NCBI RefSeq assembly: GCF_002113885.1
Contig: NW_018408382.1
Location: forward strand, 189,693 to 253,692
Origin: Mizuhopecten yessoensis
Lineage: Eukaryota
Length of the DNA: 64,000 nucleotides
Direction of reading: 5' to 3'
A program made the translations under genes and the position numbers. Shown here in pieces: positions 12,696-63,516 of this stretch. The notes under the pieces are model-generated. The model did no database searches, was not told the origin of the DNA, and was given only the letters and a program-made list of their open reading frames with translations. The number at the start of each line of letters is the position of its first letter. Within the stretch, counting starts at the first letter, position 1.

Positions 12696-13544
12696 AACAA
12701 GAGGCCCATGGGCCTTAACGGTCACCTGAGTCCTACAATATTTATTTTTGTTGTTGAAATATGTACCAATTTGAGTAAAAAATAGTATAATGTTAACTTA
12801 ACTTTGTCAGGACCATGAGCTGATCATTCCTAGACCAATTTTAAGTGAGATCGGCCTATTAGAACTTAGTAGCAAAATAGCGGCCATGGCAGCCAAATTG
12901 TATTTCTGATTGACCCGAAAAATAACAACACTTTGTCAGGACCATGAGGCGATCATTCCTACCAACTTTCAGTTCAATCGGTCCAGCAGAACTTGACTTT
13001 AAGTTTGAAATAGGTTTTCAAAATGGCGGCCGTGGCGGCCATATTGGATTTCTGATCGACCCGAAAAATAACAACACTTTGTCAGGACCATGAGGCGATC
13101 ATTCCTACCAACTTTCAGTTCAATCGGTCCAGCAGAACTTGACTTTAAGTTTGAAATAGGTTTTCAAAATGGCGGCCGTGGCGGCCATATTGGATTTCTG
13201 ATCGACCCGAAAAATAACAACACTTTGTCAGGACCATGAGGCGATCATTCCTACCAACTTTCAGTTCAATCGGTCCAGCAGAACTTGACTTTAAGTTTGA
13301 AATAGGTTTTCAAAATGGCGGCCGTGGCGGCCATATTGGATTTCTGATCGACCCGAAAAATAACAACACTTTGTCAGGACCATGAGGCGATCATTCCTAC
13401 CAACTTTCAGTTCAATCGGCCCAGCAGAACTTGACTTTAAGTTTGAAATGTAAAATGTTAACGGACGACGGACGACGACGGACGACGACGGACGAAAACA
13501 GATAGCAATAGGTCACTTGAGCTAAAGCTCAGGTGACCTAAAAA
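12696..13544 (-). mobile_element. Helentron-type non-autonomous element (HINE) carrying a 146-bp tandem array and GAC microsatellite
   Basis: One end AACAAGAGGCCCATGGGCC...GGTCACCTGAG, other end GGTCACTTGAGCTAAAGCTCAGGTGACCTAAAA. Near-identical 146-bp units (GTCAGGACC at 12935, 13081, 13227, 13373) and GACG/GAC repeats near 13463-13493. Matches the described bivalve HINE layout. Confidence 0.8.
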
Positions 13545-15382: not shown

Positions 15383-16143
15383 ATAACTCATGTGAACGCC
15401 CCTCTAGCCAAGTTCTGGCTTGGACCAGGAAGGGAGATAACCCATGTGAACGCCCCTCTAGCCAAGCTCTGGCTTGGACCAGGAAGGGAGATTACTCATG
15501 TGAACGCCCCTCTAGCCAAGTTCTGGCATGGACCAGGAAGGGAGATAACTCATGTGACCACCCCTCTAGCCAAGTTCTGGCTTGGACCAGGAAGGGAGCT
15601 AACTCATGTGAACGCCCCTCTAGCCAAGTTCTGGCTTAGACCAGGAAGGGAGATAACTCATGTGAACACCCCTCTAGCCAAGTTCTGGCTTGGACCAGGA
15701 AGGGAGCTAACTCATGTGAACGCCCCTCTAGCCAAGTTCTGGCATGGACCAGGAAGGGAGATAACTCATGTGCACGCCCCTCTAGCCAAGTTCTGGCTTG
15801 GACCAGGGAGGGAGATAACTCATGTGAACACCCCTATAGCCAAGTTCTGGCTTGGACCAGGAAGTGAGATAACTCATGTGAACGCCCCTCTAGCAAAGTT
15901 CTGGCTTGGACCAGGAAGGGAGCTAACTCATGTGAACGCCCCTCTAGCCAAGTTCTGGCATGGACCAGGAAGGGAGATAACTCATGTGCACGCCCCTCTA
16001 GCCAAGTTCTGGCTTGGACCAGGGAGGGAGATAACTCATGTGAACACCCCTATAGCCAAGTTCTGGCTTGGACCAGGGAGGGAGATAACTCATGTGAACA
16101 CCCCTATAGCCAAGTTCTGGCTTGGACCAGGAAGGGAGATAAC
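15383..16143. repeat. 54-bp minisatellite, 14 copies, with one fully open reading frame
   Basis: Unit GAGATAACTCATGTGAACGCCCCTCTAGCCAAGTTCTGGCTTGGACCAGGAAGG translates as EITHVNAPLAKFWLGPGR. Confidence 0.95.
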
Positions 16144-37500: not shown

Positions 37501-40500
37501 TGGCTAATCATGTGATGTCAATGTCTTGATGTATCATAACATATGTTGCATTTGTATACTGGGAAATGTTTGCTTCAATTAATTTAGCCTTTTTGCCCAC
37601 TGTAACGAGGGTGATTTTATCATTGCAGCGAACATTTGTTAACATTATAATGTACATAGTAATTAAATGTGAAGGGCCAATTTAATATTGGTGAAAATAG
37701 ATTTTTAGGCGAAAAGTGGAGATTTCCAGGTATGCAGTAGTATAATGTACATGGTATCATTTTTCAACGTTCAGATCCAGATTGCTGCAAGAAACTAAAG
37801 CATGGTCTGACTTGGTCACACAAGAAATCCTGTTCGTGGTCATCAAATCCTAGTCCAGGTTTGTAACTTAACACAAGGTCACTCCAAAAGCTCTAAATCC
37901 TAGTCCAGGTTTGTAACTCAACACAAGGTCATTCCAAAATCTCCAAATCCTAGTCCAGGTTGTACCTCCAAACAAGGTCATTCCAAAATCTCTAAATCCT
38001 AGTCCAGGTTTGTATCTCAACACAAGGTCACTCTAAAATCTCTAAAACCTAGTCCAGATTTGTACCTCAACACAAGGTCACTCTAAAATCTCTAAATCAT
38101 AGTCCAGATTTGTACCTCAACACAAGGTCACTCTAAAATCTCTAAATCCTAGTCCCGGTTTGTACCCAACACAATGTCTAAATAATAAGACAAAACAAAA
38201 GAATAAAGCAAAGGTATCCTGAATCAAACAAATGTAATGTGTAGTTATTTTAGACCAAACAAATATATTGTGTAGTATATTGAGGCCAAACAAATTAAAT
38301 GTTTATTATCTTGAGGCAAAACAAATATGATGTGTAGTATAATAAGGCAAAATAAAAAAAAAAAATCAAGGGTAAGATATCCTTAACCACACCAAACCAA
38401 ACAAATATAATAACAAATTAAAGCTTAGTATCTTGAGGCCAAACAAATTTAATGTTAAGTATCTTGAGGCCAAACAAATTTAATTTTTATTATCTTGAGG
38501 CCAAACAAATATGATGTGTAGTATCTTGAGGCCAAACAAATTTAAAGTTAAGTATCTTGAGGCCAAACAAATTTAATTTTTATTATCTAGAGGCCAAACA
38601 AACTTAAAGTTAAGTATCTTGAGGCCAAACAAATTTAATTTTTATTATCTTGAGGCCAAACAAATATGATGTGTAGTATCTTGAGGCCAAACAACTATGA
38701 TGTGTAGTATAATAAGGCAAAACAAAAATTAAAAGCAAAGGATAAGGTATCTGTAACCACACTAAACCAAACAAAAAAGTGCAACATCATCAGGACAAAA
38801 AATCAGGTCGTAACCTAAGGCCAAGCAAAATTAATGTATAGTATCGTAAGGCTAAACAAAATAGATTGTACAAGAAGTTGAATACAAAGGCCAAACAAAA
38901 TTAATTTAACAAGAAATTGAATACAAAGGTAAAACAAATTAATGTATAGTATCCGAAGAGCAATATGAAAGAAAAGGAATACAAAGGCCAGCAAAAACCA
39001 TTTGTAATATCTTAAAGCCAACAAAATATGAAATACTAATGTATAAAGTATCCTAAAGCAAAATGAATCTGATATATTGAGGCCAAACAGATATGAAGTG
39101 TTAGATAAATTTTTGTTAGGCCAAGAAAAATATTTATGCCTGATTCTTATGTTTCCAGTAATTTTAGGGTAGGCATCAAAATCTAAGTAGTCTTCCTGGA
39201 AACATAGATATTTAGATATCAGTGTAAGGATTTCTGATACAAGATGCTGTTGTTCTGTTATAATGCGCTTTTTATGTTCTTTATACGGACATTTTTTATG
39301 ATCAGAGAATGATTACCAGTGATATTTTCAGTGGCATGATTTGATGCCTAGGCAATATTTTAACGGCCGGTAAAGGAAAGGTCACATGTTGTGACAAGTG
39401 GGGCATTGTTGATATTTTCCTGTCATGTGCTCCCTCCACCCTGGGTTCATACTAACAATCCCCCTAAATCCTTGTAGAAAGTATCGACATTCTAAGGGAT
39501 GTATTTGACGACATGAATGTTTCCATCCCTCTGTGTGACCCACATCCAGTTTAAGCCATCAATACCAACAGCAGTCGGATGTGTCAGTCCATTTTCTTCT
39601 CTCATCAAGAACTTGTGGAATTTCCCCTCAGGGGTGAGCTGGTGTATGGCATGGTTCCAGTAGTCGGATACGATGAGATGGTCATTCTGGTCCTTACATA
39701 GCCCTTTTGGATGAAATGTGAGTTCTGGGTTTGATCCTATACATCCCTTATATGTTTTGCTTATATCTTTGAAGTTCATGATAGTTCCTGGTTCACATGA
39801 ACTCTCTGGAATTCCTGGTTCACATGAACTCTCTGGAATATCTTTGGGTGTGGTCTGAATGTAGACATCTGATGCTGTTTGAACACTTTCTGGAAACTGG
39901 TTTTTAAAGAGAAAGTGGTTTTGTTCGAAAGTTTGAGAGAATATTACCTTTTCTCTAATTCCATGTTTGTTGTACTGCATCATCTTTAGTGTTACATTCC
40001 TGGGTGTTTGCCGGTTGTCAACAAATTTTTTTTCTGTGATTGAAATAACCATACCAGTGTCAGAAATTCGTATGGTTTGCCAGGATTCATCAGAGGCCTC
40101 AGGTTTTAAGTCAGCAAAGCGGTATATTAGACCTGCTTCTGTAACCCGATTGACCACAGTGCGATCTTTCTGCTGTACATAGATGCCCTGTTTTGTGACC
40201 GGAGTGATGTACACTACCCCCTTCATCAATGGTACCAGGTCTTCCTGCTTGTACTTGGCTTTAGTCAAGTCCACTAAGTACAGCAGCTCTTCTGTGACCA
40301 CAAAAGCTCTTTTCTCGTCCAAGGGAGAAATGCAATCTACTTTTGATTCACAGAATTTTATTTTTTTTGATATCTTGCCCGGATTGTCCACAGGAATGAT
40401 TCCATTAATCTGTCCAAACCAGATATCCATCTTTTCTGTATTTCCCTCTCCTTTTGTGAAAATTAATTCTTTCTCTCCTTCAGAAGCCTCAGACTTGTCC

Positions 40501-46500: not shown

Positions 46501-49500
46501 TTGTTCATTTTCTCCTACATTTTTTGACGGATTTGTTTGAAACTTACTAGGCTAAATAATTATGATATGTTGTTGTGTTTCCTTGAAAAGAAAAGAATGT
46601 CAGCTTACCACTCTTAGAATGATGCAGATCTTATTTCAATGTAAGAATGTATGTAACACTATATGGCATTCGACGGGCGTATATTGTTCCGCCCGCTGTA
46701 CTCTTGTTTTTATTGACTCGAGAAGAAATATCATCAGTCTTTTATTGTCTACAAGGAAAGAACTTGTAATATATACAATGGTAGTACCTGTGCATATGCT
46801 ATTTAAGCATTAAGCATAAGGAGGCATAAGTAGTCTAGTGGTAGGACGCCAGGCTCGTGACCGAAGGGTTGCAGGTACGCGGCGCGGCACGGCACTGTGT
46901 ATCTTTGAGCAAGATACTTTACTCCGCTTGGTCCAGTCTACTCAGCTGTAAATGAGTATGTGGTTGGGCAGTGCTAGAATTGTTGAATGTTAGCTGTGAG
47001 CGCCGAAATGGCAGCACCGGCTGTATGCTCCCCAGGGAGTTGAGAAAGATATTGGCTGGTTGCAAAGACCCTATAATCACGGATAATAATTTGTGAACCG
47101 CTGTGAGACGACCTACGAACTAGGTTGTGAGAAAGCGGTATATAAGAACCTCAAATTATTATAATTATTATCATTATTAGCTCACTTGGCCCTTCGAGCT
47201 TATGGCATGGTGCGGCGTCCGTCGTCCGACCGGTGTCAACTTTTCACTTTAAACAACTTCTTCTCAGTAACCAAAAGGCCTAGGGTGATGATATTTGGCC
47301 AGTAACATGCTTGGATGAAGGGCTACCAAGTTTGTTCAAATAAATGACCTTCATCAATTTTAAAGGTCACAGGGGTCAAATATGTAAACATCTTTAAACA
47401 ACTTCTTCTGAATAACCGAGAGGCCAAGGATGATGATGTTTGGCCAGTAACATGCTGGGATGAAGGGCTACCAAGTTTGTTCAAATAAATGACCTTGCCT
47501 TATATTCAAGGTCACAGGGGTCAAATATGTTTAAAACATTTAAACAACTTCTTCTGAATAACCCAGAGACCTAGGGTGGTGATATTTGGCCAGTGACATG
47601 CTGGGATGAAGGGCTACCAAGTTTGTTCAAATAAAGTACCTTGATTAATGTTCAAGCTCACTGGGGTCAAATATGTTTAAAACCTTTCAACAACTTCTTC
47701 TGAATAACTGAGAGGCCTAAGGTGATGATATTTGGCCAGTAACATGCTGGGATGAAGGGCTACCAAGTTTGTTCAAATAAATGGCCTTGATTTATATTCA
47801 AGGTCACAGGGGTCAAATATGTAAACATCTTTAAACAACTTCTTCTGAATAACTGAGAGGTCTAGGGTGATGCTATTTGGCCAGTAACATGCTTGGATGA
47901 AGGGCTACCAAGTTTGTTCAAATGAATGACCTTGACTTATATTCAAGGTCACAGGGGTTAAATATGTTAAAAACATTTAAACAATTTCTTCTGAATAACC
48001 AAGAGGCCTAGGATGATGATATTTGGCCATTAACATGCTGGGATGAAGGACTACGAAGTGAATGAACTTCACCCATATTGAAGGTCACTGTGGTCAATAT
48101 ATGTTTAAATCTTTAAATGATTTGTTCCGTATAACCAAAAGGTCCAGGGTAATGATATTTTGCCAGAAGCATGCTGGGTTGGAAGACTATAAACTCTGTT
48201 CAACCTAATGTCCTTGTTTGACATTCAAGGTCACAGGCGTCATATGTTTAAATCTTTTAATAGGTTCTTATGAATCAAACACTGATATACTGCCTGTAGC
48301 TGTATTTCAGTCCACTTTTAAGATTACAAGTGTGAGATTAATACCAGGTGAGCGATGCAGGCCCATTGGGCCTCTTGTTATTAAACTGCTGTCATTCTGC
48401 TGTGTGGTTCATAGGCAATACGAACGCTCACTGCATTACAAGAAAATGACATGAACCACGTTAGCTTAACCACTTGAAATTAAAAGGTGAAACGGCAGCA
48501 AAGATTTCCTGGTATACAGTAACGCCGCCTAAATTTTAAGACTACATAATGGACAGGAAGATAATGTTCCATCATGTTATGTTTCTTTCTGTGTCATTTA
48601 GTGACAAAGGCAGCACCACCCTAGAATGTAGCTTCTGTCAGCGAACCATAGGCTTGTGGAACTACAAGTCCTCTGGTGGGACTCAAACAACCGAGAATGA
48701 GCAAGAGCAGTCTGGAGATGGTCCTGTAGCCAAAAAGTTTAAAGTTGTAAGTATTATTGAATAGCTTCGTAAGATTTCATGAAAGACATCATACGCATCA
48801 ATTCTGCCTGAAAAAATGTTTTTAAGAAATCAATGACATTCTAATAGATAAGTATGAGAATCAAATCTATGAAAAGTTAAGGCTTATATTTCTTAGAAAA
48901 GCTGTCAGAAAAGTCAGATTCTTTAACAGTTTATTTGGCCAAGTGCTGGTAATAAGTAGTCTAAGATTATTACTAAGTAATTCAAGTATGACTCATACAT
49001 CAGTAACTACCTGTAGTAAGTAGAAAAAATATATAAATGATTTACCATACAAGGAAATGTTGGTGTTGTGACTCTTCAAACTAATCGCCAAATCTAAATT
49101 TTGTGTGTGGATATTTTCCACTGTAAATGTACTAAGCATGAAAACTGCAAGCATTTGCACACCACAATAATTGCCACTGTTACAGAATACAGTACAAGTG
49201 TAATTATTTTATGGTATTTCATTCTCAGACAGAGAAGGACAACTTTGACCCTATAGCAGAGCACAGGTACTGGTGCTCATGGCTGGTGGATCTGTCTGCC
49301 CCTAGAGATGTATCTACACCTTCCAAAGGTTCCCAAGGGAGCCAGTACAGCTCCCCAGTGTGTAGTCCCTCCACCCCAAACAGTAGCAGCTTTAATAGCA
49401 GTTTTGGTGAGGGGTCCCCAGGGACCAGTCAACTGGACCTGACCACCAGGCCCTGGTTCTCTATGCTAAAGCTGGTCTGTCCAGGCAAGGTGATGGACAC

Positions 49501-55549: not shown

Positions 55550-55872
55550 AGTAACACATATTTGACCTTGGTAGCTCAGATTTGACCTTGGTAACACATG
55601 TTTGACCTTGTTAATACATGTTTAACCTTGGCAACACTGTTTTGACCTTGATAGCTCATATCTGACCTTGGTAACATTTTTGACTTTTGCAACAGGTTTG
55701 ACCTCGGTAATACATGTTTGACCTTGGTATCACTGTTTTCACTTTTGTAGCTCATATTTTACCTTGGTAACATGTGTTTGATCTTGGCAACACTGTGTTG
55801 ACCTTGGTAACACATGTTTAACCTTGATAACGCTGTGTTGACCTTGTTAGCTCATTTGTTTGACCTTGATAA
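55550..55872. repeat. Diverged 20-bp minisatellite (TTTGACCTTGGTAACACATG), about 15 copies
   Basis: Direct inspection. Confidence 0.85.
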
Positions 55873-58800
55873 CTACTAAGTCTATTACATAACTATAACC
55901 CCAGGACACATTAACAAATTAAGCAAAAAACAAATCACAAATGATATATATCAACATAGGTTAATTATCAATACATATAATGGGTAAGTAGCATTAAAAT
56001 AAATCAACAGGAAAAATCAATACATTCAAATGTCAATGCTATTTTCCCACATTTAAGAACTTGTGTATAACATCTTTTGAACAGAATTAACAGGTTTTGG
56101 TACATTTTTTCTGTGATGGTTTCGAGAATTGAAAAATGAAAGAAAACTTGAAAAAAATCTTACAATACATGACATTCCTTCATGGAAATAGGTTTTTGTA
56201 TCTGTGAAATGTAAAATTTCATTAGAAGATTGCTTTAATTGTGCACTTTTAAAATGACTTAAGAATCAGTGCATGCTTAAATCTTTGTGAAATCCATCAG
56301 AACAAGCTCAACAGTCAATGTAAAATGCTGTGTTTTCAACAATGATAATGACTTCAAGAAGATTGATAATGTTTGTTTTCTTCATTTTAGTACTGTGTTC
56401 ATACATTTAAATAATGAAAATGACATGACTGACAATAGTTTAATATCCTACTAGAACAAAAATCACCACATGGGGAAAAAACTTCTATAAATTTGATGGT
56501 CAGATGTTACTCTTTGATATGTAGACCCTAATATCAGTACTCAATGCCTTACATAGCCGAGTATTGGAGATTCAAATGTAAATTCATTGTCTTCAACAAA
56601 TTTACAAAGTATGAAAGTTATACGCCATACAGAATGTTGCAGAAAGTGTTTTTTTAGTTTTTTTTATTAAAACCAGTGAATATGAAATGAAAGTGATATA
56701 GGACAATAATTTAATCCTAAACACCTAAACAAGTTGAATATTCTTTTCAATATCTTTGAAAACCATTTTATCAAATGAAAACAATTAGAAATATCTTACT
56801 GATATCAGAAAACAGTACGGAAAACCTGGCATACATGTATACAATCAAACGTAACTATTGTCTGACAGAAAGGATAGTGCGACTGAATTCTTTAAAGTAA
56901 AACATAACAGGGAAATGTAGCAAAACAAAGATAAAATGCATTGTACTATTAAAAGCTGAAAAATCACTTCGGCATCCATAACCAGGTTCTCACACACGAC
57001 ATGCAATCCTTTACACCCCTATCGCTCATACACGCACCACACATCAGGCACAAATCACGCGAACAGACACAAGTTTATCATTCAAATATATATATATGTT
57101 AGAAAATTCAAGATGCAATAAATTCTCATCAAAATCTCTTTCTATGCCAAATATCATTTTCATTTACCCAAAATTCATCTGAAACAGGTAGTTCTGTCTG
57201 ACTTTTCTTATCTCATCTAACACATGCCTCCAGACAAACAATTTTTGATCTTTAAAAGAAATGTAATTCATTTTATCACAAAGAATGATTTTATCTTATT
57301 TTTTGCTATTAATTAACTTAAACTAATTCCTCCTACTTTTTCTAAAGGAATGTAATAGAAGTAATTTCCAAAATTTAAAAAGTCAATTCAAATCTTGACA
57401 GAATAAATTTGCATATAATTTCTTTTAGTGATGTTTCATTAAGATAATTGAATTTGTAATTCCTCCGTTATTTTATTACTAATTAAGAAATTCGAAGTTT
57501 GATTTCCCTAATCATTTTATTTTAAAATGTAAAAACAAAATTGCACGTAACAAATACTAATATCTTTTGTGTTGTTTAAAGATATTAACGCCTAAAACAG
57601 TGATCACAATCAATTGGATAAATCAATATATTTTTCAACTATTAAAATCACATTAAAATTGATATTTCTTGCATATCAAAAACATTGTGTAGAGTCTTGT
57701 ATCTACATTACATCAAAACACATTTGCAGGCATATTGCATTTTGGATTTTCCTAAACAACATGATTAATAATCAATGATACACTACATGAACTCCGTTGG
57801 GAGAAGACCAGGGGATGGCTAACGTTGGTTTTAATTCCACACAAAGGGTCAACTTTCATGAATCCTCTATATCAACACAATATTATACATAACCCAACGA
57901 CACTTGCAGCAATGTTTCAACATTAACGAGGTATCTTTAGTCAGTGCTACAGGTACCTGTAATCTTAACAGGGCATTTGTTTAGAATAAACCAATCTTTC
58001 TTCAAATTTTTACCTTTTCTCTCTTCAAAGCATAAAAACAAAATGTGATGCTTATCTTTTCTTAATTTACTCTGTCTTTAAACAAATTTAACACTTGTGA
58101 AAGGAGTTTCTATGATAATATTTGAGTACAAAGATCAATAAACTATTCACTGTTCCTTTTTTTTTCTCCGTGTCTTTAACATAATCACTACATACAATGA
58201 AAAATCAAGCAAGAACTTGCATGTTGTGCCAACTCTGGTTTTAATATTATATTGACTTTTCAAGAATATTTCTGTTTCTTTTAATGGGACATAACTTTTA
58301 TAATTACTATAAAAGATACAACTGGTCTTAAAATGCATGTCCCCGGTAACTGAATAGCTGCACAAAATATTTTCATAAACATTGTCCCATTTCTACTTTT
58401 CAGCTATGTCAATGTATTATTTAAAATAAAATTACTTGACATTTTCGTTTTATTTAGAAGTTGGGCCATATTTGTTCCAAATATAGTTATTGCTATGTAT
58501 AACTTCATAATGATTTCGAAAACATTTGAAACAGTTTTTTTCCCAAAAAGCTTTCTGAAGGCTTCATTTGTAAGAAAGAAAGTCTGAAAGACAAAATGGG
58601 TAGAAAAACAGATTTGTAGCACTGTGAAATGACTGAAAGACCAGACAAAGAATCAATCTGTTTGAAAGTCAAATTAAGGTAACAATAAAATACATGTCGC
58701 CTTGTTAGCTGTTCCTTAAAAAGACAAGATATAACATTTCAACAATTCCAAACATCTATCATCTATTGTGATTAAAATTATTTTTTTAAATAAATGTGTC

Positions 58801-59775
58801 TTTCAAATAAAATTCTGAAGTGCATATTAAGCATATGCAACGAATGTCATAAATTTCTCGTAAGAGTATTGAACTTTGAAATGTACTCGAGAATGAAATA
58901 TTTTAAATTTCTTTTTTGTAAAATAATTAATTTGAATCCAAGTCCATAGGCATGCATCAGCATACCATACAATTAAGCTATGAACATATACAATACAAAC
59001 TCAACACAAGCTTAAGTTGTATCAATCTAACATCTCCTCTGGAGTAAAACCCTTAATACAGCAAGTATGGTTTCTTATACAAAACACCTGTTTCCACTCA
59101 GTACCCTATGAAGATTATTATATTTATGGACTTTTCTTCACCAACTAAAACCATTTCATGCAAATAAACCACAGATAGATCTGACTAGACAAGGAAAGTC
59201 TACCATTTTGTCAATACAATCAACAACAGGTACCCTGAGCTTTCACTGGAAAATAAAACTATTTCAATGGAACACATTTTGTATCAGATTTGACCTCTAA
59301 AAATACCTACTGAAATAACAGAGAATTTTGATCAGATCGAAATTGCCTTCGTGGATGTTGATTTGATAAAAAAATATCCCTGAGTTTATATTGTGATCGA
59401 CAGAGGATAAAGGAAAGCATTATCTCTCTTCAGCATTTAGCAGTCATAAAAAGGTTTACATTGTCTTTTCATTTGAACTAGCTTCTTGCAAAACAATCTT
59501 CATCTGAAGGCAATATGGTATGAAAAGTGAAACTAATCAATCTGATAGATCTCATGTGGCTTAAAAGAACGAAATGGCTCAACTTAATACAGAAATTTTG
59601 ACAGAGACAAATCCTGAACTCTGAAAATAAACATGAAGTCATATAACAACAGACTGGTCCAGATCTCAGACGTCCCTGTAGCAACAGACAAGTGTCGCAC
59701 AGTCACTGATCCCCATGGTCGGTGAGAGGATGATGTACTTGTATGTACAGATGAGAATGTCTAGTGTACGATGTG

Positions 59776-62700
59776 TTATAGCTCCATGTCCTGTGCCTCA
59801 TCCTCGGAGAAGTCACTCATGGAGCTCTCACTAGACGATGACTGATGCTCTTGTTCTCGAAGGGCCTCTTCTGTTGCATACTTTCTAACATACTCTGTCA
59901 ACATAAAAAACAGCACCATTTTGTTTAGTTACACACTTCCTAACATACTCTGTCAACATAAGAAACAGCCCCATTTTGTTTAGTTACACACTTCCTAACA
60001 TCCTCTGTCAACATAAGAAACAGCACCATTTTGTATAGTTACATACTTTCTAACATACTCTGTCAACATAAGAAACAGCACCATTATGGTTAGTTACATA
60101 CTTCCTAACATACTGTATCAACATAAGAAACAGCACCATTTTGGTTAGTTACATACTTCCTAACAAACTGTATCAACATAAGAAACAGCACCATTTTGTT
60201 TAGTTAAACACTTCGTAACATACTCTGTCAACATAAGAAACAGCACCATTTGGTTAGTTACATACTTCCTAATTAACATACTCTGTCAACATAAGAAACA
60301 GCACCATTATGGGTAGTTACATACTTCCTAACATACTGTATCAACATAAGAAACAGCACCATTTTGGTTAGTTACATACTTTCTAACATACTCTGTCAAC
60401 ATAAGAAACAGCACCATTATGGTTAGTTACATACTTCCTAACATACTGTATCAACATAAGAAACAGCACCATTTTGGTTAGTTACATACTTCCTAACATA
60501 CTCGGTCAACATAAGAAACAGCACCATTTTGGTTAGTTACATACTTCCTAACAAACTGTATCAACATAAGAAACAGCACCATTTTGTTTAGTTACATAAT
60601 TCCTAACATACTCTGTCAACATAAGAAACAGCACCATTATGGGTAGTTACATACTTCCTAACATACTGTATCAACATAAGAAACAGCACCATTTTGGTTA
60701 GTTACATACTTTCTAACATACTCTGTCAACATAAAAAACAGCACCATTTCATTTAGTTACATACTTCCTAACATACTCTGTCAACATAAAAAACAGCACC
60801 ATTTTGTTTAGTTACACACTTCCTAACATACTCTGTCAACATAAGAAACAGCCCCATTTTGTTTAGTTACACACTTCCTAACATCCTCTGTCAACATAAG
60901 AAACAGCACCATTTTGTATAGTTACATACTTCCTAACACACTCTGTCAACATAAAAAACAGCACCATTTTGTTTAGTTACACACTTCCTAACATACTCTG
61001 TCAACATAAGAAACAGCACCATTTTGGTTAGTTACATACTTCCTAACATACTCTGTCAACATAAGAAACAGCACCATTTGGTTAGTTACATACTTCCTAA
61101 TTAACATACTCTGTCAACATAAGAAACAGCACCATTTTGTTTAGTTACATACTTCCTAACATCCTCTGTCAACATAAGAAACAGCACCATTTTGGTTAGT
61201 TACATACTTCCTAACATACTCTGTCAACATAAGAAACAGCACCATTATGGTTAGTTACATACTTCCTAACATACTGTATCAACATAAGAAACAGCACCAT
61301 TTTGGTTAGTTACATACTTCCTAACATACTCGGTCAACATAAGAAACAGCACCATTTTGGTTAGTTGCATTTTTTCTAACATACTGTATCAATATACCAA
61401 ATGGCCCTATTTTAATAAAGTAATATATTACATCATAGAGGTGCACATTTTATAATGTAGTAATTTCAATTATTTTTGTTTTAAAATTGAAATTAATTAC
61501 CTGAAATGACAATCTTTATACTAGAGGACATACCTGAATAAATATATGGGGAACAGGTAGACATTTTTTATGACATCTGCCTTCCACATATTTATTCTGG
61601 CTGGGTCCCACTTTATAACCTTATAAATGTTAACCCCCCCCCCCCAATGATGTACATTGTAAATTTGTACACTTATTTTTTTGGTATTATCAAAATTATT
61701 CTATCTGGAATAGCCATTAGCATATATATATAATGATGATGCCACATTAATGCAACGTTGGTTTCAAGAAGCTGAGTTTGTTTAGGGCCTTTCTTTTATT
61801 AGATAAACATGAAAAATACAACTTTTTTCTTCTTCCAACAAAGGTGTTTCTTGTTTCTATACCAAGAGTTGAACAGTGGCAATTTACTCTCATTTGTGAT
61901 TTGAACATATTTTACGAAATAAGTGTAATCCCTATTGGAACTTAAATTTTCATCATCATTCTTCTATCTCTTTTCATACAAAGTCTCATAAGTCTGTTCA
62001 ATATTTCATAACATCAGTATTTCTATACTAATCCATATGATATTTTTTCTTTTATCTCCAAACCATGACTTGAGATATTTTGGCTGTTAGCTGACATCCA
62101 GATATTTGTATCAAATATAAACATTTACCTTGTACTTTCTTTTTGTAGTCCTCTGGCTTGTGCAGGTACATGGCAGCTGCGTCTCCATTTAAAGGATCTA
62201 TTGGGTTAGGGTAGGTCAGGAGCTGGGGCAAGAAAGACTCAAAGATGTTGGACAGGTCTGCAACACATTAGGCTTACGTGTTAACACATTTATATCCCAA
62301 ATCAAATCATGTATATTTTAATGTAAACTAATTTGTTTTTACATACATAGTGCTTTTGGTGTATAAAGTCTTAATAAATCTGTTAAATCTATTATAATAT
62401 ATAAGTAAAAGTTGTTGTTTTCCAACGAAATGTAACATGAAACAACAGATATTATTTACTTGGCCCGAGAGTGACTGTTAAGACAAAACAAACAAATATT
62501 GCTCTTTTCCATACATTCTTACCTAAATCTTCGCTATATATATTCATATCAAATAGAATTCTAAAACTTTGAATATTGATATGTTTTCAATCTTGAACAC
62601 CTACATATCGAAAAATTAACTGGTAATTAATATATATTGCAAAAGAAATCAAACTTCATGAAAATAATACAATGTACCTTCGTCTTTATTTTAAACAATA

Positions 62701-63516
62701 GATATTCCGCATTAAATACTTGCCATACAGAGCTGTCCATGCTTGGTTGATGACGTCTAAACACACTGTACCCGACCTGTAAGAAAAACACTCGAAATAA
62801 TACGTGAACATTTACAATAAAGTCATCAGGGATACAGATGCTAAGTTGCACAACACAATTTTCAACTTTTTGGGGCATTGTGTTGTATCTGAAATTAAAT
62901 AAACTGTAAAATCTCTACAAGCATATGGAAATGTTCTTATACATACATTTTGTGACAATAAAGTTTACATATCCTCAGTGTGATTACCACATTAGTGGTG
63001 TTTCACAAAATTCTGATAAAAAAATATTTTCTGACTGATAATCTTATTTCAGTCTATCCTTCCTGCTAATTTTATTAATTTTATTAGCAGGGATATACCT
63101 GGGTAAAAAGAAAAGTATGGACTTACACTTCATCTATGTTAGGATGGAAGATCCTATTCATGAAACCTAGAAATGGAAATAAAGGCATCATTCACATGAA
63201 ACCATTCACTCAGGTTTTACATTTTTACTATTTTAACTTGTTTAATTTCAAGAACACATTCACCAATTACAGTACTGTGAAAACATGATCATCTTATTTA
63301 ATCTTTCTTTTACTTGTTGGATAGCAACTCATCACCAGGATTGATTTATATATGAAATTGGAACCATTGACGTCATAACCAGTGATTGGTTAGGATGTTA
63401 ACACAACTGTTATGCAGATAAATTTCTAAACAGAAGCAAACCTATGGAAGGTGACTTGAAAGGGTACTTCTCGGGTAAATCCACCCTAACTTTCCACACA
63501 CCTCCTTCATATGGAG
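59776..63516 (-). CDS. UBE2H: Ubiquitin-conjugating enzyme E2 H, last five coding exons (5' part lies beyond the window)
   Basis: Exons (minus) 63516-63442 ([25 protein letters not shown]), 63166-63127 ([13 protein letters not shown]), 62776-62724 ([17 protein letters not shown], catalytic Cys), 62257-62129 ([33 protein letters not shown]...), 59894-59776 ([12 protein letters not shown]...[19 protein letters not shown]). The acidic tail is diagnostic of UBE2H. Confidence 0.96.
59878..61395 (-). repeat. 55-bp minisatellite (about 27 copies) made of the UBE2H last-intron 3' end plus the start of the terminal exon
   Basis: Plus-strand unit CTAACATACTCTGTCAACATAAGAAACAGCACCATTTTGTTTAGTTACATACTTC. 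The first unit overlaps the real acceptor at 59895. Confidence 0.95.
62258..62723 (-). other. Non-canonical GC-AG intron in UBE2H
   Basis: Exon ends ...CTG TAT G|GCAAGT. The conserved ALY-DL junction requires this donor. Confidence 0.85.

What the first reader, a model, noticed from the sequence alone, without database searches (positions are those of the whole stretch)
59878..61395. About 27 tandem copies of a complete 3' splice-site module upstream of the UBE2H terminal exon
Seen: on the transcribed (minus) strand each 55-nt unit reads ...GTAACTAAC-CAAAATGGTGCTGTTTCTTATGTTGACAG|AGTATGTTAGGAAGTAT. That is a branchpoint-like TAACTAAC (TAACTAAAC in some units), the same acceptor as the true exon, the first 17 nt or so of the exon (EYVRKY), and GTATGT donor-like hexamers. 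Only the last copy continues into the real tail. Use of the adjacent upstream acceptor gives [21 protein letters not shown], which deletes the acidic [19 protein letters not shown] tail. Established: that tail is phosphorylated and mediates UBE2H pairing with the GID/CTLH E3. Inference: because this is the terminal exon, such isoforms would escape junction-dependent NMD, so the array could act as a copy-number-tunable splicing switch. Otherwise the spliceosome must skip about 26 near-identical decoys, possibly by recursive steps. Some units carry a GATACAG|TATG variant that shifts the AG by 2 nt.
Basis: partly seen in the sequence, partly recalled or inferred. Interest (0 to 1): 0.8.

Follow-up and report, generated by a model that had tools for sequence, protein, structure and literature searches.

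The report
Silent splice-site minisatellite in scallop UBE2H
The last intron of a scallop UBE2H gene holds 26 head-to-tail copies of the gene's own final splice acceptor, but RNA reads from three samples splice only at the genuine last copy, so this is a harmless "mirage" minisatellite of a known kind and not a splicing switch.

Summary
A 55-bp unit is repeated 27.6 times at 59873-61396 (minus strand) and occurs nowhere else in the 988-Mb genome. Each unit is 33 nt of intron 3' end plus the first 22 nt of the terminal coding exon of a UBE2H orthologue. There are 26 decoy acceptors: 17 in register (CAG|AG) and 9 with the AG shifted by 2 nt. One decoy is identical to the real acceptor from -154 to +10.

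The proposed copy-number-tunable splicing switch is not supported. In raw RNA-seq reads of three samples, the only junction listed is 62129 to 59894 (61 reads). Depth inside the array is 0-1% of exon depth, like the rest of the intron. No AG|GT exists in the array, so zero-length recursive splicing is impossible, and no 1-nt or 13-nt insert products were listed.

This is a "mirage" minisatellite, a tandem duplication of an exon-intron boundary. The kind is described in amphioxus (Adh3, globins, TnC, PGBD5) and in human F7 intron 7, where the exon-proximal copy is likewise the only one used. The scan has already met it in other windows of this genome, and a donor-side array lies in this window at 37845-38178.

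The finding is a new member of a known kind. Its modest value is as a natural experiment that places the acceptor-choice signal at exon position +11 or beyond.

The parts
59873..61396 (-). 55-bp minisatellite, 27.6 copies. Unit = 33 nt of intron 3' end (branch-like motif, pyrimidine tract, AG) plus 22 nt of exon start. A further degenerate partial unit reaches about 61412.
   Evidence: TRF; unit table; sequence
59895..62128 (-). Last intron of the UBE2H orthologue (GT..AG, 2234 nt). Its 3' two thirds are the array.
   Evidence: Joint 59894/62129 'skips 2234, CT..AC', with 16, 28 and 17 reads in three RNA-seq runs
59776..59894 (-). Coding part of the terminal exon, (E)[38 protein letters not shown] plus stop TAA at 59778-59776. 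This is the only acceptor seen in use.
   Evidence: Translation; match to UBE2H 8pjn residues 144-183 at E = 9e-12; RNA joint
58800..59775 (-). 3' UTR, covered by RNA reads at least down to 58800. Its true end was not determined.
   Evidence: Depth table
62129..62257 (-). Penultimate exon (…[42 protein letters not shown]), with its donor at 62129.
   Evidence: Translation; PDB UBE2H hits at E = 7e-21; joint and loose ends
62724..62776 (-). Antepenultimate exon ([17 protein letters not shown], holds the catalytic Cys motif). The following intron 62723-62258 begins with GC (GC-AG intron).
   Evidence: The loose-end consensus at 62258 matches 62725-62754 exactly; sequence
60768..60931 (-). 164-nt stretch around decoy 11 that is letter-for-letter identical to 59885-60048 around the real acceptor (-154 to +10)
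59949..61330 (-). Span of the 26 decoy acceptors; the coordinates are the first 'exon' base of each in the real acceptor's register. The 17 in-register decoys are at 61220, 61165, 61110, 61052, 60997, 60942, 60887, 60832, 60777, 60722, 60612, 60392, 60282, 60224, 60059, 60004 and 59949. The 9 decoys with the AG 2 nt further on are at 61330, 61275, 60667, 60557, 60502, 60447, 60337, 60169 and 60114.

Best explanation
This is a 'mirage' minisatellite. A 55-bp piece straddling the boundary between the last intron and the last exon of UBE2H was duplicated in tandem. It then expanded by unequal exchange of one to several units, always on the intron side of the one copy that continues into the real exon.

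The 26 extra acceptors are silent. The spliceosome pairs the donor at 62129 only with the copy that is contiguous with the genuine exon body. Since one decoy is identical to the real site from -154 to +10, the choice cannot lie in the branch site, the pyrimidine tract or the AG. It must come from exon context at +11 or beyond. The likely sources are the purine-rich sequence from +23 (…CAGAAGAGGCCCTTCGAGAACAAGAGCATCAG…) acting as an enhancer, and/or the intron-like content behind each decoy (a GTATGT 14 nt after the AG, then the next branch/pyrimidine module) acting as a silencer.

Shown: the array, its junction origin, its restriction to this locus, and exclusive use of the last acceptor in three RNA samples. 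Inferred: the mode of expansion, the exon-definition mechanism, and selective neutrality.
For: - Structure: TRF. The unit is 33 nt of intron plus 22 nt of exon, and the authentic copy sits at the 3' edge.
- Multi-unit exact repeats of 116-164 nt inside the array (units 9-11 = 25-27, 1-3 = 16-18, 13-14 = 19-20, 17-18 = 23-24) show growth by block exchange.
- The 5'-most unit keeps the exon states AGAAA and GCAAC that the interior units have lost. This is the edge effect typical of homogenised arrays.
- The unit occurs at one locus only in the genome.
- RNA: the only listed joint is 59894/62129, with 16, 28 and 17 reads. The bin 59970-60086, which would be exonic in transcripts from decoys 1-23, has depth 0, 2.2 and 0 against exon depth of about 21, 46 and 29. 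Non-array intron bins in X23 show the same depth of about 1.
- The only listed loose end at the donor reads AGTATGTTAGAAA, which fits the real exon.
- Predicted local RNA accessibility of the real acceptor (0.41) lies inside the decoy range of 0.20-0.46.
- Precedent: amphioxus mirages duplicate splice sites without disturbing splicing (PMC3087553; PMC3902484). In human F7 IVS7, only the exon-proximal of 5-9 identical donors is used (PMC1557585).
Against: - Only three RNA samples from one study were read, about 19% of each run, and the tissues are unknown to me. Junctions with fewer than 3 reads are not listed, so a leak of a percent or two cannot be excluded.
- The discriminating exon element is not identified. 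Purine content differs only slightly (0.62 against 0.55).
- Decoy-spliced RNAs might be made and then degraded.
- Copy number and the order of variant units rest on a single assembly that has gaps (54 N in the window). A few intronic reads fit the array only with 4 or more differences, so either individuals differ or the assembly is imprecise.
Confidence: 0.8

Rival explanations
1. Regulated or copy-number-tunable switch. In some tissue, stage or stress, decoy acceptors are used and give tail-less UBE2H that cannot pair with the GID/CTLH E3.
For: Every decoy would truncate the protein before the acidic tail, with the stop in the last exon. The 17 in-register decoys have acceptor signals as good as the real one, and decoys 8, 11 and 12 are identical to it from at least -27 to +3.
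Against: Across three samples, 61 junction reads went to the real acceptor and no decoy junction was listed. Array depth is at intron background. The same kind of array is silent in amphioxus and human F7. Such arrays are reported in many unrelated genes of this genome (unchecked notes; one more in this window), which argues against a UBE2H-specific design.
Confidence: 0.06
2. Decoys are used, but the products are removed by RNA decay, so steady-state RNA shows only the correct junction.
For: Decoy use would lengthen the 3' UTR by up to 1.4 kb, and long 3' UTRs can trigger junction-independent decay (general knowledge).
Against: A stop in the last exon escapes junction-dependent decay (general knowledge). 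With 26 competing sites, nearly complete removal would be needed to give zero depth next to the exon in two of three samples. It would also waste most of the gene's transcripts, which is unlikely for a conserved E2.
Confidence: 0.05
3. The array is crossed stepwise by recursive or nested splicing.
For: Each unit has an acceptor and two GTATGT donor-like motifs.
Against: There is no AG|GT anywhere in the array. Re-splicing from the A|GTATGT or GAA|GTATGT motifs would leave 1 or 13 extra nt, and via the GATACAG variant would lose 1 nt. No such insert, deletion or joint is listed (tables 4, 5 and 5c).
Confidence: 0.03
4. The decoys act as a sink for U2AF/U2 that slows removal of the last intron and so tunes UBE2H output (the decoy-exon type of intron retention).
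For: Twenty-six complete branch/pyrimidine/AG modules could bind splicing factors unproductively (inference).
Against: Intron depth is only about 0-2% of exon depth in all three samples, so there is no sign of retention.
Confidence: 0.04
5. Assembly artefact. The array is real, but its length and unit order are wrong in this assembly, or, in the extreme, the array does not exist. This is not exclusive of the best explanation.
For: Tandem arrays longer than a read are hard to assemble. The exact 116-164-nt internal repeats could come from gap filling. Some RNA reads fit only with 4 or more differences. An amphioxus mirage was mis-assembled in its draft genome (PMC3087553).
Against: 150-nt reads from other animals lie wholly inside the array, and 60-67-nt contigs of an unrelated run span more than one unit. 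Eighteen runs from 10 studies hold part or most of the stretch, up to 0.77 of its words. The patterned variants are typical of real minisatellites.
Confidence: 0.25

Closest known systems
Amphioxus 'mirage' minisatellites (Adh3, globins BflGb6/BflGb9, troponin C, PGBD5)
   Same: Both are tandem, minisatellite-like duplications of an intron/exon boundary with the authentic copy at the edge of the array, spare AG/GT signals, and normal splicing. BflGb6 is the same acceptor-side type (3' end of intron plus 5' part of exon). Both show homogenised interiors and divergent edge units (PMC3087553; PMC3902484).
   Different: The host here is a mollusc, not a cephalochordate. The unit is 55 bp with 26 spare copies, against 3-6 copies of 150-160 bp in BflGb6. 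It abuts a terminal coding exon. Length polymorphism and somatic instability, shown for Adh3, were not tested here.
Human F7 intron 7 37-bp VNTR (Borensztajn et al. 2006, PMC1557585)
   Same: In F7 the first element of the minisatellite spans an exon-intron boundary, giving 5-9 identical splice sites. Only the exon-proximal one is used, although the pseudo-sites are functional when tested. No secondary structure explains the choice.
   Different: F7 is the donor-side mirror image, explained there by 5'->3' scanning from the exon. Here the sites are acceptors and the most downstream one is used. That is the opposite of what 5'->3' scanning from the donor would choose.
Engineered tandem duplications of acceptor sites in globin genes (cited in PMC1557585; the role of exon sequences in choosing between duplicated sites is from my memory of Reed and Maniatis 1986)
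   Same: The question is the same: which of several identical acceptors is chosen. Exon sequence next to the site matters.
   Different: Those constructs had two copies and gave conflicting results. This is a natural 27-copy case in an invertebrate, with only 22 nt of exon per decoy.
Recursive splice sites and decoy exons
   Same: Both involve intronic 3' splice-site modules far from the exon.
   Different: Recursive sites need AG|GT, and none exists here. Decoy exons promote intron retention, and none is seen here.

Membership tests
Mirage minisatellite (tandem duplication of an exon-intron boundary) | Head-to-tail array of short units | tested here: met
   Period 55, 27.6 copies, 91% matches
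Mirage minisatellite (tandem duplication of an exon-intron boundary) | The unit contains both intron and exon sequence of the host gene's own junction | tested here: met
   33 nt of intron end plus 22 nt of exon start. The units differ from the real junction at 3-16 of 83 positions, apart from the two units shifted by an indel.
Mirage minisatellite (tandem duplication of an exon-intron boundary) | The authentic junction is the edge copy, continuous with the exon | tested here: met
   Unit 27 runs on into the coding exon and is the acceptor used
Mirage minisatellite (tandem duplication of an exon-intron boundary) | The spare splice sites do not disturb normal splicing | tested here: met
   The only listed joint is 59894/62129, with 61 reads in 3 samples. 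Array depth is at intron background. Limited to three samples of one study.
Mirage minisatellite (tandem duplication of an exon-intron boundary) | Length instability or polymorphism between alleles | tested here: inconclusive
   A few intronic reads of other animals fit with 4 or more differences. Array length was not measurable with the single reads call.
UBE2H / Ubc8 ubiquitin-conjugating enzyme | UBC core with the catalytic Cys motif | tested here: met
   Exon 62776-62724 reads [17 protein letters not shown]. The next exon matches UBE2H chains 2z5d and 8pjn at E = 7e-21. Exons were searched one by one. The joined protein was not built.
UBE2H / Ubc8 ubiquitin-conjugating enzyme | C-terminal acidic Ser-rich extension | tested here: met
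   [21 protein letters not shown] aligns to the end of human UBE2H, 8pjn residues 144-183, at E = 9e-12
Recursive splice site | An acceptor AG directly followed by a donor GT (AG|GT) | tested here: not met
   0 AGGT in the 1502-nt array
Alternative 3' splice-site switch | More than one acceptor seen in mature RNA | tested here: not met
   One joint only in three RNA-seq samples

The most novel reading that the evidence does not exclude
In a tissue, stage or stress not sampled here, or in animals with much longer arrays, a share of transcripts uses decoy acceptors and makes a UBE2H without the acidic tail. Such a protein would be uncoupled from the GID/CTLH ligase, so a hypervariable minisatellite would set the dose of active E2.
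Probability: 0.05. Interest if true: 0.6.

Novelty: new member of a known kind. Interest (0 to 1): 0.25.

Why it matters
The finding is mostly ordinary. It is one more exon-boundary ("mirage") minisatellite, in a genome where the scan has already met many.

Its value is as a clean natural experiment on acceptor choice. Twenty-six complete branch/pyrimidine/AG modules, one identical to the real site over 164 nt (-154 to +10), are ignored in favour of the copy that touches the true exon. This places the deciding information at exon position +11 or beyond. It also argues against simple 5'->3' scanning or first-come-first-served choice of acceptors in this animal.

Practically, such arrays can mislead gene predictors into calling truncated UBE2H isoforms, and they are likely to be mis-sized in short-read assemblies.

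Tried and rejected
- **Recursive splicing.** Rejected: no AG|GT in the array and no insert products.
- **RNA structure hiding the decoys.** Local unpaired probability is the same for the real and decoy sites.
- **Dispersed repeat or transposon origin.** The unit occurs only at this locus.
- **Structured RNA gene in the intron or array.** No Rfam family reaches its gathering score anywhere in the window.
- **Other assemblies of the locus.** A look-up of the 47-aa genomic ORF that covers the acceptor and the tail exon found nothing on record.
- **Full-length protein searches.** Not run, because the spliced model was not joined. Exons were searched one by one by reference. For the same reason no orthologous intron of another scallop could be fetched.
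- **The big protein searches.** Not used, because the protein is not in doubt.
- **Papers not held.** The primary paper on the UBE2H tail (PMC10843684) and the Adh3 mirage paper (PMC117041) are not in the library. Both are cited only through papers that cite them.
- **Organism name.** A paper search to confirm it from assembly statistics found nothing. 'Yesso scallop' rests on my memory of the assembly size (987.6 Mb, 82,659 pieces) and on earlier notes of the scan.

Full report
**Observation**

On the minus strand, 59873-61396 is a tandem array of a 55-bp unit: 27.6 copies, 91% matches, TRF score 2465. Splitting it on the pyrimidine-tract anchor gives 27 acceptor modules. The 27th runs on into the coding sequence (E)[38 protein letters not shown].

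The unit is 33 nt of intron end (TAACCAAAATGGTGCTGTTTCTTATGTTGACAG) plus the first 22 nt of the exon (AGTATGTTAGAAAGTATGCAAC). In the decoys the exon part carries C>T at +19 in all 26 copies and A>G at +11 in 23 of them. The branchpoint-like TAACTAAC is therefore a product of the unit junction.

Seventeen decoys keep the in-register CAG|AG. Nine have the AG 2 nt further on: seven GATACAG|TATG and two GACCGAG|TATG. The in-register decoys would give EYVRK…VC*-type endings of 4-21 residues. The shifted ones would give VC*.

The unit is found only at this locus in the window's own 987.6-Mb assembly.

**Gene**

The two exons upstream were fixed by RNA reads.
- Exon 62257-62129 translates to [42 protein letters not shown]. 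It matches solved UBE2H chains at E = 7e-21.
- The tail exon aligns to the last 40 residues of human UBE2H in entry 8pjn at E = 9e-12.
- The loose ends of reads at 62258 match 62725-62754 exactly. This defines exon 62776-62724 with the catalytic-Cys motif.

The exons were searched one at a time by reference. I did not build the joined protein, so searches that need the full-length product were left out.

That the tail governs pairing with the GID/CTLH ligase rests on Chrustowicz et al. 2024. I could see only its title, in a reference list (PMC12687426), because the paper itself is not held.

**Test of the splicing idea**

Raw reads of three RNA-seq samples of the same species were laid on 58800-62300. 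At least 85% of the laid reads in each run were 99% or more alike. The listing thresholds were set as low as allowed.

- The only joint listed is 59894/62129 (skips 2234, GT..AG on the minus strand), with 16, 28 and 17 reads.
- The one listed loose end at the donor (7 reads) reads AGTATGTTAGAAA. That is the real exon's version, not the AGGAA of most decoys.
- A transcript spliced at any of decoys 1-23 would carry the bin 59970-60086 as exon. Its depth is 0, 2.2 and 0, against about 21, 46 and 29 in the neighbouring exon bin.
- The bin that contains decoy 26 shows no excess over what its 42 exonic bases predict.
- Over the whole array, depth is about 0-1% of exon depth. In X23 it equals that of the non-repeated part of the intron.
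- Zero of 61 junction reads gives an upper 95% bound near 5%. The depth argument puts the bound nearer 2%.

I could not test dependence on array length. The samples come from one study, and I do not know the tissues.

**Recursion and structure**

The array holds no AG|GT, so zero-length recursive sites are absent. Re-splicing from the A|GTATGT or GAA|GTATGT motifs would leave 1 or 13 extra bases. Passing through a GATACAG variant would lose one base. No such product is listed (tables 4, 5 and 5c).

The predicted unpaired probability of the region from -35 to +3 is 0.41 for the real site and 0.20-0.46 for the decoys. Local folding therefore does not single out the real site.

**Where the choice must lie**

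Decoy 11 (first base 60777) is identical to the real acceptor from -154 to +10; the stretch 60931-60768 equals 60048-59885. Decoys 12, 18 and 24 are identical to it from +1 to +18, with 27, 12 and 12 identical bases upstream. Branch site, pyrimidine tract and AG therefore cannot explain the choice. The signal is at +11 or beyond, and mainly beyond +22, where the real exon goes on and the decoys return to intron-like sequence.

I infer exon definition. Factors bound to the true exon body recruit U2AF/U2 to the nearest upstream acceptor. The decoys are followed 14 nt later by a GTATGT and then by another branch/pyrimidine module.

The enhancer is not identified. Purine content differs only slightly (0.62 against 0.55).

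Use of the most downstream copy runs against simple 5'->3' scanning from the donor and against first-come-first-served choice.

**Origin**

Exact internal repeats of 116-164 nt show expansion by exchange of multi-unit blocks: units 9-11 = 25-27, 1-3 = 16-18, 13-14 = 19-20 and 17-18 = 23-24. One of these blocks reaches the real junction. The 5'-most, degenerate unit keeps the exon states AGAAA and GCAAC, as expected if the interior is homogenised and the edges are not.

The window is rich in minisatellites (41 TRF rows). It holds a second junction array on the donor side of another gene at 37845-38178: the exon end …TCAAATCCTAGTCCAG|GTTTGT followed by about six more copies.

**What is known**

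This kind of array has a name, 'mirages'. [quoted passage not shown] They carry spare AG/GT signals yet do not disturb splicing (PMC3087553; PMC3902484).

The human F7 gene has the donor-side equivalent: 5-9 identical donors, of which only the exon-proximal one is used although the others are functional (PMC1557585).

Earlier notes of this scan report the same kind of array in several other windows of this genome and call the animal the Yesso scallop. I did not check those notes. I reached the mirage literature independently through.

**Verdict**

The switch interpretation is not supported. The array is a new member of a known kind. Interest is low to modest. The useful points are the direct RNA test and the very tight sequence control, identical over 164 nt, that it offers for studies of acceptor choice.

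The copy number should be treated as provisional until long reads confirm it. An amphioxus mirage was mis-assembled in its draft genome.

Noticed in passing
window 37845-38178 (+ strand): Second junction minisatellite. A 50-bp unit occurs 6.7 times. The first copy looks like an exon end plus donor (…TCAAATCCTAGTCCAG|GTTTGTAAC…), and the later copies repeat about 15 nt of exon plus 35 nt of intron. This is a donor-side 'mirage', like human F7. I read the sequence only and made no RNA test.
   Followed up: partly
window 62258-62723 (- strand): The intron between exons 62776-62724 and 62257-62129 begins with GC (…CTGTATG|GCAAGT…) and ends with AG, so it is a GC-AG intron. The junction is supported by the loose-end consensus of 18, 50 and 21 RNA reads, which matches 62725-62754 exactly.
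   Followed up: partly
whole window, e.g. 12873-13449, 15383-16143, 47247-48260, 55551-55873: The density of minisatellites is very high: 41 TRF rows in 64 kb. It includes a 54-bp unit x14 at 93% and a 146-bp unit x4 at 98%. This high background rate of local tandem duplication makes junction-spanning arrays less surprising.
   Followed up: no
window 59970-61913, run X2: A run filed as metatranscriptomic RNA holds short contigs from the array and the unique intron (depth 3-60) but none from the exons or the 3' UTR. It probably carries genomic DNA of this animal, or the exon contigs were removed by the tool's filter. It says nothing on expression.
   Followed up: no
window 58832-59758 (3' UTR): Several differences from the assembly are shared by reads of the RNA samples. 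Examples are 59016 G>T in all reads of X23 and X24, a 1-base deletion at 59368 in three runs, and a cluster at 58852-58888. They look like ordinary allelic variation.
   Followed up: no
window 59970, 60002, 60790, 60853, 60885: The few intronic reads inside the array differ from the assembly exactly at unit-specific variant positions (for example GGG>GGT and GAGGATG>GAGTATG on the minus strand). Either the order of variant units differs between animals or it is imprecise in the assembly.
   Followed up: no
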